The translations under genes were made by a program, and so were the position numbers. A stretch of DNA of 64,000 bases from Octopus sinensis (lineage: Eukaryota): positions 13,099-77,098 of the forward strand of contig NW_021833281.1 of the NCBI RefSeq assembly GCF_006345805.1. Reading direction: 5' to 3'. Shown one piece after another: positions 55,291-56,144 of this stretch (positions are counted from its first letter, which is position 1; the number at the start of each line of letters is the position of its first letter). Below the pieces are notes generated by a model, which saw nothing but the letters and a program-made list of their open reading frames with translations, ran no database searches and was not told the DNA's origin.

Positions 55291-55471
55291 TTCTATACCA
55301 AGTTTTCCACCAAAAATCTAAAATTTCCACTGAGCGTCAATCTGATATGTCCACTGTGTACGTCCAATTAACTTTTGTTGTGTTTCCTGTTTTATTTTGT
55401 TCTTGGATTTGCCTTCACACATACACACACACGCTCCCTCCCAAATACTTGACAAATATATTTATAAATCA

Positions 55472-55905
55472 GAAATATTGAATTTCTAAATCTCTCGTAG
55501 AGACATGTACGGTGGTGGGGCGATAGAATGGTTGTATACTGTCAATCTAACAAGAACGTGACAGTAGGGGGTACACCACCGCTGTATAGCACTAGGAAGC
55601 ATCGAACGCCTCCTGATGGCTTTGACACATTTTTCCCTGTGTCCTTATATACATTTACGAAGGGGAGACAAACACCCCGGCTGCCGGAACTGCATCTAGG
55701 GACACGTGTTTCAGGATCGTTGTCCTTCATCGGCCTAGAGTAGCAGACACCGGGGGTGTTTGTCTCCCCTTCGTAAATGTATATAAGGACACAGGGAAAA
55801 ATGTGTCAAAGCCATCAGGAGGCGTTCGATGCTTCCTAGGGCTATAGAGCGGTGGTGTACCCCCTACTGTCACGTTCTTGTTAGATTGACAGTATACAAC
55901 CATTC
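55472..55905 (-). mobile_element. Fold-back element: 158-bp inverted arms enclosing a hammerhead, 15-bp TSD
   Basis: Arms 55523-55680 and 55750-55908 differ by two substitutions and one indel. The direct repeat tatatttataaatca lies at 55457-55471 and 55906-55920. Confidence 0.85.
55695..55739 (-). ncRNA. Minimal type I hammerhead (U4C core) in the hairpin loop
   Basis: tctagg-CCGATGA-agga-caacga-tcct-GAAAC-ACGT-GTC-cctaga; palindrome ACACGTGT. Predicted cleavage between 55701 and 55700. Confidence 0.8.
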
Positions 55906-56144
55906 TATATTTATAAATCATTTTATTTAAAGTATAGCGTATTCTTGTGATTGTATATATTTTAGTTGTAAACCCGAGCAAACCCAGCTATAGCTGCTGG
56001 TATGTGTTATTGTCATTGTGTGTGTTGTTGTGTGAGTGTGTTTGCTTGCATTTACACACAAACACTAGCTGTAGCAATAGGTGCCCTTCCCCAGGTTTGT
56101 ACCTACATGGTGGTTTATATGTATCCTATATGTATATATGTGTA

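What the first reader, a model, noticed from the sequence alone, without database searches (positions are those of the whole stretch)
55457..55920. Rod-like fold-back element with a hammerhead in its loop
Seen: 158-bp inverted arms with only three differences enclose a 69-nt spacer whose centre is a well-formed minus-strand HHR (6-bp stem I, GUC site, palindrome ACACGTGT, U4C core). A 51-bp tail and an exact 15-bp direct repeat bound the unit, and it has no coding capacity. Known: PLE insertions produce inverted pLTR pieces, but then the HHR normally lies within the repeated arms; retrozymes carry HHRs in direct LTRs. Inference: a young non-autonomous retroelement whose RNA would be a long dsRNA rod with a ribozyme at the tip. 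Cleavage would give two annealed strands, possibly a self-priming template, an siRNA source or a circularisation intermediate. This is the best candidate here for an undescribed system.
Basis: partly seen in the sequence, partly recalled or inferred. Interest (0 to 1): 0.9.

Follow-up and report, generated by a model that had tools for sequence, protein, structure and literature searches.

The report
Head-to-head truncated Penelope-type retroelement insertion
The hairpin-shaped element is real, but it is best read as one ordinary insertion made by Penelope-like retrotransposon machinery: two truncated copies joined head to head, with only the longer one reaching back to a hammerhead ribozyme motif.

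Summary
There is a 434-bp insert at 55472-55905. It is flanked by an exact 15-bp duplication. It has 161-nt inverted arms with 4 mismatches, a 64-nt centre and a 51-nt extension on the left side only. The centre carries the window's only canonical type-I hammerhead motif, on the minus strand at 55739->55695. Its core has C in place of U4, and it is well beyond chance (0 of 200 random windows).

The interpretation as an undescribed fold-back system is not needed. Every structural feature is a published hallmark of integration by Penelope-like elements (PLEs):
- head-to-head inverted 5'-truncated copies
- a one-sided "tail" at the 3' end of one copy
- a target-site duplication of variable length
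- an AT-rich target
- a sense-strand hammerhead upstream of the 3' end

The hammerhead sits in the "loop" only because the long copy (276 nt) extends 64 nt further than the short one (158-161 nt).

A second, older insert of a different hammerhead family at 24485-24998 has the same layout, again with a 51-nt tail. There the short copy reaches through the ribozyme.

The ribozyme is a dimer-dependent type and is present here as a single copy with a weakening core change, so it is probably inactive.

No other copy could be found. The source genome is not in any searchable collection, so copy number and the parent element remain untested.

The parts
55457..55471 (.). Left copy of the target-site duplication, TATATTTATAAATCA
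   Evidence: Exact 15-mer direct repeat, family D6. The target region is 75% A+T.
55472..55522 (-). One-sided 51-nt 'tail': the 3'-terminal extension of the long copy, absent from the short copy
   Evidence: Lies outside the inverted repeat on the left side only. Corresponds to the PLE 'tail' described in PMC8557442 and PMC3846280, and to the stretch between two reverse-transcription start sites in PMC11167929.
55523..55683 (-). Left arm: body of the long copy (sense strand is the minus strand). Contains a local hairpin ACUGUCA...UGACAGU and a CGGUGGUG stretch that pairs with CACCACCG in the tail.
   Evidence: Inverted repeat I1; arm alignment; fold of the long copy.
55684..55747 (-). 5' segment present only in the long copy (the 'loop'); contains the hammerhead motif
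   Evidence: 64 nt between the arms. The minus-strand reading is continuous with the left arm.
55695..55739 (-). Type-I hammerhead ribozyme motif with C4 in the core. Predicted cut between 55701 and 55700. The closing stem extends the motif to 55690-55746.
   Evidence: Motif scan and randomisation; Rfam RF00163 full-length but sub-threshold match, 14.3 bits; folding and dimer cofold.
55748..55905 (+). Short inverted copy (sense strand is the plus strand). It is 5'-truncated 17-22 nt downstream of the ribozyme cut site and has no tail. Homology runs on to 55908, overlapping the duplication by TAT.
   Evidence: Inverted repeat I1; arm alignment with 4 mismatches, all transversions.
55906..55920 (.). 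Right copy of the target-site duplication
   Evidence: Exact 15-mer direct repeat D6.

Best explanation
This is one dead-on-arrival insertion made by the reverse transcriptase/GIY-YIG endonuclease of a Penelope-like element. The template was a hammerhead-bearing RNA: either the pLTR/5' region of a PLE or, more likely given the ribozyme type, a PLE-dependent non-autonomous 'retrozyme'-type RNA.

Inferred steps:
1. The enzyme cut both strands of an AT-rich target about 15 bp apart.
2. Each freed 3'-OH primed a cDNA on the template RNA, starting at one of two internal start sites about 51 nt apart.
3. The cDNA from the outer site gave the long copy (minus-strand sense, 55747->55472, 276 nt: hammerhead, body, tail).
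4. The cDNA from the inner site gave the short copy (plus-strand sense, 55748->55905/8, no tail), which stopped before reaching the ribozyme.
5. The two 5'-truncated ends were joined in the middle, head to head, and gap repair produced the 15-bp duplication.

The inverted repeat and the rod-like fold are therefore by-products of integration. The hammerhead sits in the loop only because one copy is 64 nt longer than the other.

Shown: the anatomy, the ribozyme motif and its type, and a second insert with the same layout.
Inferred: the enzyme, the two start sites and the order of events.
For: Anatomy. The layout is duplication - 51-nt tail - arm - 64 nt - inverted arm - duplication. The hammerhead is on the strand for which the tail is 3'-terminal and the 5' ends meet in the middle, i.e. 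head to head. There is no poly(A) or simple-repeat tail at either end. The target is 75% A+T.

Literature match:
- PLE insertions are highly 5'-truncated. [quoted passage not shown] Duplications there are 8-10 bp, the inverted copy is shorter than the direct ones, and palindromes sit at head-to-head junctions (PMC3846280).
- Purified anole PLE protein cleaves and extends both strands, prefers AT-rich DNA, and starts reverse transcription at two internal sites in an AC-rich stem-loop. The stretch between those sites is the tail. In that element the ORF starts inside the hammerhead (PMC11167929).
- Here the inner end lies in a stretch of about 70% A+C (UAUACAACCAUUCUAUCGCCCCACCACCG) inside a predicted stem-loop, and an AUG-initiated ORF starts in the CCGAUGA box.

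Ribozyme type. Helix I is 6 bp, helix II is 4 bp, and helix III is 2 bp with a palindromic tetraloop. That is the 'canonical' metazoan type-I hammerhead, which works as a dimer in tandem repeats (PMC4209133, PMC7229834; fold test).

Recurrence. An unrelated hammerhead family at 24485-24998 shows the same layout. It has a 13-nt duplication with 1 mismatch, a one-sided 51-nt tail and arms of about 94 nt at 92.6% identity. Both of its arms reach the ribozyme.

An intact PLE ORF with a GIY-YIG domain lies 7 kb away (46452-48818), so the machinery exists in this genome.
Against: No parent element was found.
- The arms, loop and tail match nothing else in the window, including the resident PLE.
- 23-24-nt probes from the ribozyme and the arm found nothing in the metagenome, prokaryote-genome or viral collections.
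- The ORF peptide has no relatives.
The link to a PLE therefore rests on architecture, not on sequence identity to a known pLTR.

Other weaknesses:
- The tail is 51 nt, longer than the published 30-40 nt.
- The 15-bp duplication is longer than the 8-10 bp reported for rotifer PLEs, although the length is stated to be variable.
- The junction is not clean. Arm positions 3 and 5 mismatch, and the ribozyme's own helix I and closing stem extend the hairpin. The exact break between the two copies is therefore ambiguous, and a snap-back origin cannot be excluded.
- All four arm differences are transversions, which is odd for simple post-insertion decay.
Confidence: 0.7

Rival explanations
1. Same enzyme family, but the inverted repeat arose by self-priming (snap-back) rather than by priming on both target strands. 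The nascent cDNA of the long copy folded back on itself at the DNA version of the ribozyme's helix I and closing stem. It then copied itself outwards, producing the second arm.
For: The 3' end of the long copy's cDNA (...CCTAGAGTAGCAG, 55734-55746) is complementary to CTGCATCTAGG (55690-55700). A second CTGC lies at 55681-55684. PMC3846280 infers self-priming from palindromes at the inverted junctions of head-to-head Penelope copies.
Against: Copying back from either fold-back point predicts TTCCGGCAGCCGGGG or CCGGGGTG immediately after GCAG. The sequence actually reads ACACCGGGGGTG, so extra and changed bases are needed. Snap-back synthesis should also run to the end of the first cDNA and so copy the tail, but the second arm stops exactly where the tail begins.
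Confidence: 0.12
2. The fold-back unit is itself a propagating non-autonomous family. A hairpin-shaped RNA with a ribozyme at its tip is transcribed, recognised at its 3' arm and tail by a PLE reverse transcriptase, and copied as a whole.
For: A whole-unit retrocopy would show the same duplication and a tail at only one end. The arms are nearly identical and the duplication is intact, so the insert is young. Copy number could not be measured.
Against: - Only one copy occurs in 64 kb and none in any searchable collection.
- The end of the short arm coincides with the start of the tail, which the two-start-site model predicts and this model does not.
- A reverse transcriptase would have to traverse a perfect RNA duplex of about 160 bp.
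- An unrelated family in the same window has the same layout with a different truncation point. That points to a generic integration by-product.
- The ribozyme is a single, dimer-dependent copy with U4C (PMC3088659).
Confidence: 0.08
3. A DNA transposon of the MITE or foldback type, with long terminal inverted repeats.
For: Long, near-perfect inverted repeats, small size, no coding capacity and a flanking direct repeat.
Against: The inverted repeat is not terminal on the left, where 51 unpaired nt lie between the duplication and the arm. A 12-15-bp duplication is longer than those of the known cut-and-paste superfamilies (own knowledge). The centre holds a statistically significant hammerhead motif typical of retroelements.
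Confidence: 0.04
4. An assembly or sequencing artefact, such as a chimeric fold-back read that created a false palindrome.
For: Palindromes are a known failure mode of long-read libraries. PLE tandem/inverted structures are reported to trouble assemblies (PMC8557442).
Against: The palindrome is asymmetric: it has a tail and a 64-nt unique centre. It is bounded by an exact 15-bp duplication of AT-rich target DNA and carries 4 arm differences. An artefact would not produce any of these features.
Confidence: 0.03

Closest known systems
Penelope-like element (PLE) insertions with an inverted 5'-truncated copy and a one-sided 'tail' (Evgen'ev & Arkhipova; PMC3846280, PMC8557442, PMC11167929)
   Same: Head-to-head inverted copies; an extension at the 3' end of only one of them; a variable-length target-site duplication; an AT-rich target; a sense-strand hammerhead upstream of the 3' end; no poly(A).
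   Different: Both copies are severely 5'-truncated (276 and about 160 nt), so there is no reverse transcriptase/endonuclease ORF and no direct pLTR pair. The tail is 51 nt rather than 30-40. The ribozyme is of the canonical type-I kind rather than the minimal, helix-III-less variant usual in autonomous animal PLEs. No parent PLE with this sequence was found.
Metazoan non-LTR retrozymes (PMC7229834; bioRxiv 10.64898/2026.07.22.740005)
   Same: The hammerhead has helix I of 6 bp with a UAC/U internal loop, helix II of 4 bp with a 6-nt loop, and helix III of 2 bp with a palindromic tetraloop. It is dimer-dependent. The long copy (276 nt) falls in the size range of a retrozyme monomer. The sequence is non-coding and of low GC. 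The duplication is larger than 4 bp.
   Different: Retrozymes are defined by tandem direct repeats and abundant circular RNAs. Here there is a single ribozyme, no direct repeat, and an inverted partial copy. The papers read here do not describe inverted arrangements or tails for retrozymes.
L1 'twin priming' inversions (Ostertag & Kazazian 2001; recalled, not checked here)
   Same: The second target strand also primes reverse transcription, giving an inverted segment inside one insertion flanked by a single duplication.
   Different: In L1 the two segments are different parts of one RNA, so no true inverted repeat forms, and there is a poly(A) tail. Here both segments start at almost the same 3' site and overlap fully, giving a palindrome.

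Membership tests
PLE-mediated insertion | Adjacent inverted 5'-truncated copy, head to head | tested here: met
   Arms at 55523-55683 and 55748-55908. The hammerhead sense strand places both 5' ends in the middle.
PLE-mediated insertion | Short extension ('tail') at the 3' end of only one copy | tested here: met
   The 51 nt at 55472-55522 occur on the left only. This is longer than the published 30-40 nt.
PLE-mediated insertion | Target-site duplication of variable length, AT-rich target, no poly(A) | tested here: met
   Exact 15-mer (12-15 bp after the 3-nt overlap); target 75% A+T; no A-run at either end.
PLE-mediated insertion | Hammerhead motif in the repeat, in the sense orientation | tested here: met
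   Motif at 55739->55695 on the strand for which the tail is 3'-terminal. It is present in one copy only because the other copy is shorter.
PLE-mediated insertion | Sequence identity of the arms to the pLTR/5' region of an autonomous PLE (or a PLE-dependent element) in the same genome | not testable with these tools
   The source genome is not searchable. There is no match to the resident PLE or anything else in the window, and none in public collections.
Autonomous Penelope-like element | Single ORF with reverse transcriptase and a GIY-YIG endonuclease | tested here: not met
   Only a 62-codon ORF with no relatives. The element is a truncated or non-autonomous product, not an autonomous PLE.
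Hammerhead ribozyme, type I | Conserved core CUGANGA ... GAAA ... UH | tested here: inconclusive
   All core positions are present except U4, which is C (CCGAUGA). U4C lowers activity considerably in vitro but is tolerated in a viroid (PMC3088659).
Hammerhead ribozyme, type I | Three helices around the core | tested here: inconclusive
   Helices I and II are predicted with p = 0.73-1.0. Helix III has p = 0.003 as a monomer and forms only as an 8-bp intermolecular helix in a dimer.
Hammerhead ribozyme, type I | Rfam RF00163 gathering score | tested here: not met
   14.3 bits against 34. The alignment is full length at the same coordinates. No hit in wider searches.
Hammerhead ribozyme, type I | Self-cleavage at GUC | not testable with these tools
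   Needs in vitro transcription.
Metazoan non-LTR retrozyme | Canonical type-I hammerhead (helix I 6 bp, helix II 4 bp, short helix III with a palindromic loop) | tested here: met
   compared with the description in PMC4209133 and PMC7229834.
Metazoan non-LTR retrozyme | Tandem direct repeats of a 170-400-nt monomer, each with a hammerhead | tested here: not met
   No direct repeat of the unit and only one hammerhead at this locus.
MITE / foldback DNA transposon | Inverted repeats that are terminal at both ends | tested here: not met
   51 unpaired nt separate the left duplication from the left arm.

The most novel reading that the evidence does not exclude
The palindromic unit is not a one-off. 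It would be a propagating, hairpin-shaped non-autonomous partner of a PLE: its transcript is an RNA duplex of about 160 bp capped by a hammerhead, and it is copied as a whole from the arm-plus-tail 3' end.

A weaker but likelier novelty is that this locus shows a retrozyme-type (canonical type-I hammerhead) RNA integrated with the full PLE signature of tail, inverted twin copy and variable duplication. That would be direct structural evidence that PLE enzymes mobilise retrozymes.
Probability: 0.08. Interest if true: 0.6.

Novelty: new member of a known kind. Interest (0 to 1): 0.15.

Why it matters
Taken as read here, it matters little: it is one more dead PLE-type insertion in a repeat-rich invertebrate genome.

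It has some value as a clean, young textbook example. The intact duplication, the tail on one side only and two copies of unequal length match the recent in vitro finding that a PLE enzyme extends both target strands from two internal start sites.

Two unrelated hammerhead families in one window both carry a 51-nt tail. This hints that the spacing of the start sites is set by the enzyme rather than by the template sequence.

If the template was a retrozyme rather than a PLE pLTR, the locus would support the proposal that animal retrozymes are mobilised by PLEs.

It is also a warning for annotation. Such inserts look like MITEs, foldback elements or long hairpin-RNA genes.

Tried and rejected
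- **Other copies in the window.** I searched with blastn (word size 7, E<=10) and found none.
- **A paralogous empty site in the window.** I joined the two flanks with one copy of the duplication; only self-matches came back.
- **Protein search with the 62-aa ORF that starts in the hammerhead box.** No candidates.
- **Exact-pattern scans of metagenome, prokaryote-genome and viral collections.** I used a 24-mer from the ribozyme and a 23-mer from the arm.
- **Relatives of the resident PLE ORF.** I fetched L001 and L002 to look for the same hammerhead or arm. They contain no hammerhead motif and no similarity. The resident PLE is not the parent.
- **Rfam.** There are no hits at the gathering threshold in the window. 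Nothing relevant appears in 801 nt at E<=10: the mir-584 and rli48 'hits' only reflect the hairpin.
- **tRNA search.** None found.
- **The long copy as a 'highly self-paired' retrozyme-like rod.** Rejected: z = -1.1.
- **Host organism.** Not settled. The PLE's best relatives are only 57% identical, and some are mis-binned in bivalve-symbiont genomes. SINE-like repeats at 4930-5330 and 25817-25981 recall cephalopod (octopus) SINEs from memory only.

Full report
**1. What is there**

The region reads as follows:
- an exact 15-mer, TATATTTATAAATCA, at 55457-55471
- 51 nt with no partner, at 55472-55522
- a 161-nt arm, at 55523-55683
- a 64-nt centre, at 55684-55747
- the reverse complement of the arm, at 55748-55908
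- the same 15-mer again, at 55906-55920

The arms differ at four positions (3, 5, 93 and 100 from the inner end), and all four are transversions. The last three bases of arm homology (TAT) are also the first three of the right 15-mer, so the duplication is 12-15 bp.

**2. The ribozyme motif**

A structure-aware scan of both strands of the whole window for a type-I hammerhead gave one hit with a helix III, on the minus strand at 55739->55695. The scan required helix I, C[U/C]GANGA, helix II, GAAA, helix III and UH.

The hit reads UCUAGG-CCGAUGA-AGGA(CAACGA)UCCU-GAAA-C(ACGU)G-UC-CCUAGA. None of 200 randomised windows contained a motif as good, and the relaxed criteria are expected 0.03 times per window.

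Beyond a UAC/U internal loop, helix I continues with a 4-bp stem, CUGC/GCAG.

Rfam's Hammerhead_1 model aligns end to end to exactly these coordinates. It scores only 14.3 bits (gathering score 34), and the match is visible only when 86 nt are searched (no hit).

The dimensions are helix I 6 bp, helix II 4 bp, and helix III 2 bp with a palindromic tetraloop. These are the ones given for 'canonical' metazoan type-I hammerheads, whose unstable helix III makes them work as dimers in tandem repeats (PMC4209133). This is the kind found in non-LTR retrozymes (PMC7229834).

Folding agrees with that description. As a monomer, helices I and II are predicted with p = 0.73-1.0, but helix III with p = 0.003. 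Two copies cofold through an 8-bp ACACGUGU helix (-39.1 kcal/mol against 2 x -14.7).

The core has C at position 4. U4C 'considerably decreases activity in vitro', though it is tolerated in a viroid (PMC3088659). The motif is therefore a genuine hammerhead by descent. As a single copy with C4, it is probably a poor ribozyme at this locus.

**3. Reading the element strand by strand**

On the minus strand, the centre, the left arm and the 51 nt form one continuous 276-nt sequence: hammerhead, body, tail (55747->55472). On the plus strand, the right arm is a second copy of the body only (55748->55905/8).

The two copies therefore lie head to head, with their 3' ends outwards. The long copy has a 3' extension that the short copy lacks. 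The short copy stops 17-22 nt downstream of the ribozyme cut site. There is no poly(A) at either end, and the target is 75% A+T.

An ORF begins at the AUG inside the CCGAUGA box and runs 62 codons to a stop shared by both arms. It has no relatives.

**4. Comparison with the literature**

This layout is the published signature of integration by Penelope-like elements.

- PMC8557442: insertions are highly 5'-truncated. [quoted passage not shown] The duplication length is variable, and hammerheads lie in the pLTRs.
- PMC11167929 (purified anole PLE protein): the enzyme cleaves and extends both target strands and prefers AT-rich DNA. It starts reverse transcription at two adjacent internal sites in an AC-rich stem-loop, and the tail is the sequence between these two sites. 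The ORF begins within the hammerhead.

In the present element, the boundary between body and tail lies in a stretch of about 70% A+C within a predicted stem-loop. In that stem-loop, CGGUGGUG of the body pairs with CACCACCG of the tail.

The simplest account is one insertion event in which both target strands primed cDNA synthesis. One cDNA started from the outer start site and ran 276 nt. The other started from the inner site and ran about 160 nt.

The hammerhead is 'in the loop' only because the two copies are unequally truncated. Its helix I and closing stem merely prolong the hairpin.

**5. A second example in the same window**

A relaxed scan that allowed the PLE-type minimal hammerhead (no helix III, one extra base after A9) found one more motif, at 24642->24597 on the minus strand. 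It lies in the left arm of another inverted pair, 24549-24642 and 24895-24987, which are 92.6% identical. The right arm carries the same ribozyme with a one-base deletion in the core.

The right arm abuts TATAGAAGGGTTA (24986-24998). The same 13-mer with one mismatch lies at 24485-24497, which leaves 51 unpaired nt (24498-24548) on the left only.

An unrelated family thus shows the same architecture and the same tail length, but there the short copy runs through the ribozyme. This argues that the layout is a generic by-product of the integration machinery of this genome, not a property of one special RNA.

The centre of this older insert is obscured by an (ATT)n microsatellite and a tRNA-like stretch. 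Neither ARAGORN nor Rfam recognises that stretch as a tRNA.

**6. Machinery and context**

The window is eukaryotic, 37% G+C and packed with microsatellites. It contains LINE fragments.

It also holds an intact 788-codon ORF with a C-terminal GIY-YIG domain at 46452-48818 (-), i.e. a PLE. The closest relatives of this PLE are 57% identical and unnamed. Several more distant ones are filed under bivalve-symbiont bacterial genomes, presumably host contamination.

This PLE shares no sequence with the element. Its relatives fetched from public assemblies carry no comparable hammerhead. It shows that the enzyme class is present, but it is not the parent.

**7. What could not be done**

The decisive test is whether the arm, centre and tail occur elsewhere as a linear or tandem element or a pLTR, or whether the palindrome itself recurs. 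That needs the source genome, which none of the collections holds. The 23-24-nt probes and the peptide found nothing. The assignment to PLE machinery therefore rests on architecture and on the in-window parallel.

**8. Rivals**

- Snap-back of the first cDNA at the helix I palindrome would also give a head-to-head repeat (PMC3846280). It predicts a different sequence at the junction and a copied tail.
- A propagating fold-back family cannot be excluded without copy-number data. It does not explain why the short arm ends exactly where the tail starts, and it requires reverse transcription through a duplex of about 160 bp.
- A MITE or foldback DNA transposon is excluded by the non-terminal left arm.
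- An assembly artefact would not produce an asymmetric palindrome bounded by a perfect target duplication.

**9. Verdict**

The interpretation as an undescribed system is not supported. The element is a new, unnamed member of a known kind: a doubly truncated, head-to-head PLE-type insertion of a hammerhead-bearing RNA, most likely of the retrozyme type. Interest is low.

Noticed in passing
window 24485-24998: A second, older head-to-head hammerhead-bearing insert of an unrelated family. It has a 13-nt duplication with 1 mismatch (24485-24497 and 24986-24998), a one-sided 51-nt tail (24498-24548) and arms at 24549-24642 and 24895-24987 (92.6% identical). The left arm carries an intact PLE-type minimal hammerhead at 24642->24597. 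The right arm carries the same motif with a 1-nt core deletion. The centre holds (ATT)n and a tRNA-like stretch that ARAGORN and Rfam do not confirm.
   Followed up: partly
window 46452-48818 (-): An intact 788-codon PLE ORF with a C-terminal GIY-YIG domain. Its 5' end runs into an (AC)n microsatellite, and no pLTR or hammerhead was detected around it. Several of its relatives in public databases are annotated as proteins of bivalve gill-symbiont bacteria (Ca. Thiodiazotropha, Solemya velum symbiont). These are probably host-DNA contamination of those genome bins.
   Followed up: partly
window 55523-55908: All four differences between the two arms are transversions (G/C, C/G, T/G, C/G). This is unexpected for ordinary post-insertion decay. 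It may reflect reverse-transcriptase errors, two slightly different template RNAs, or consensus errors in a palindrome.
   Followed up: no
window 33965-34315 and 37159-37509: The longest inverted repeat in the window: 351 nt, 85% complementary, 2.8 kb apart. It lies next to a LINE-like gag/APE/RT region (37832-41046). Its nature was not examined.
   Followed up: no
window 4930-5330, 5394-5511, 23559-23721, 25817-25981: SINE-like repeats, some in inverted pairs. From memory they resemble abundant cephalopod (octopus) SINEs, which would place the window in a cephalopod genome. This was not verified with any tool.
   Followed up: no
window 8960-10830, 37832-41046, 49673-51497: LINE fragments with APE-type endonuclease, reverse transcriptase and a CCHC zinc knuckle. 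No host protein-coding gene was recognised anywhere in the 64 kb.
   Followed up: partly
window 56120-56700: A large compound microsatellite, (TATG)n -> (TCTA)n -> (TCTG)n, starts 200 bp to the right of the element. Similar compound arrays lie at 49170-49370 and 43200-44350. The microsatellite density of the window is unusually high.
   Followed up: no
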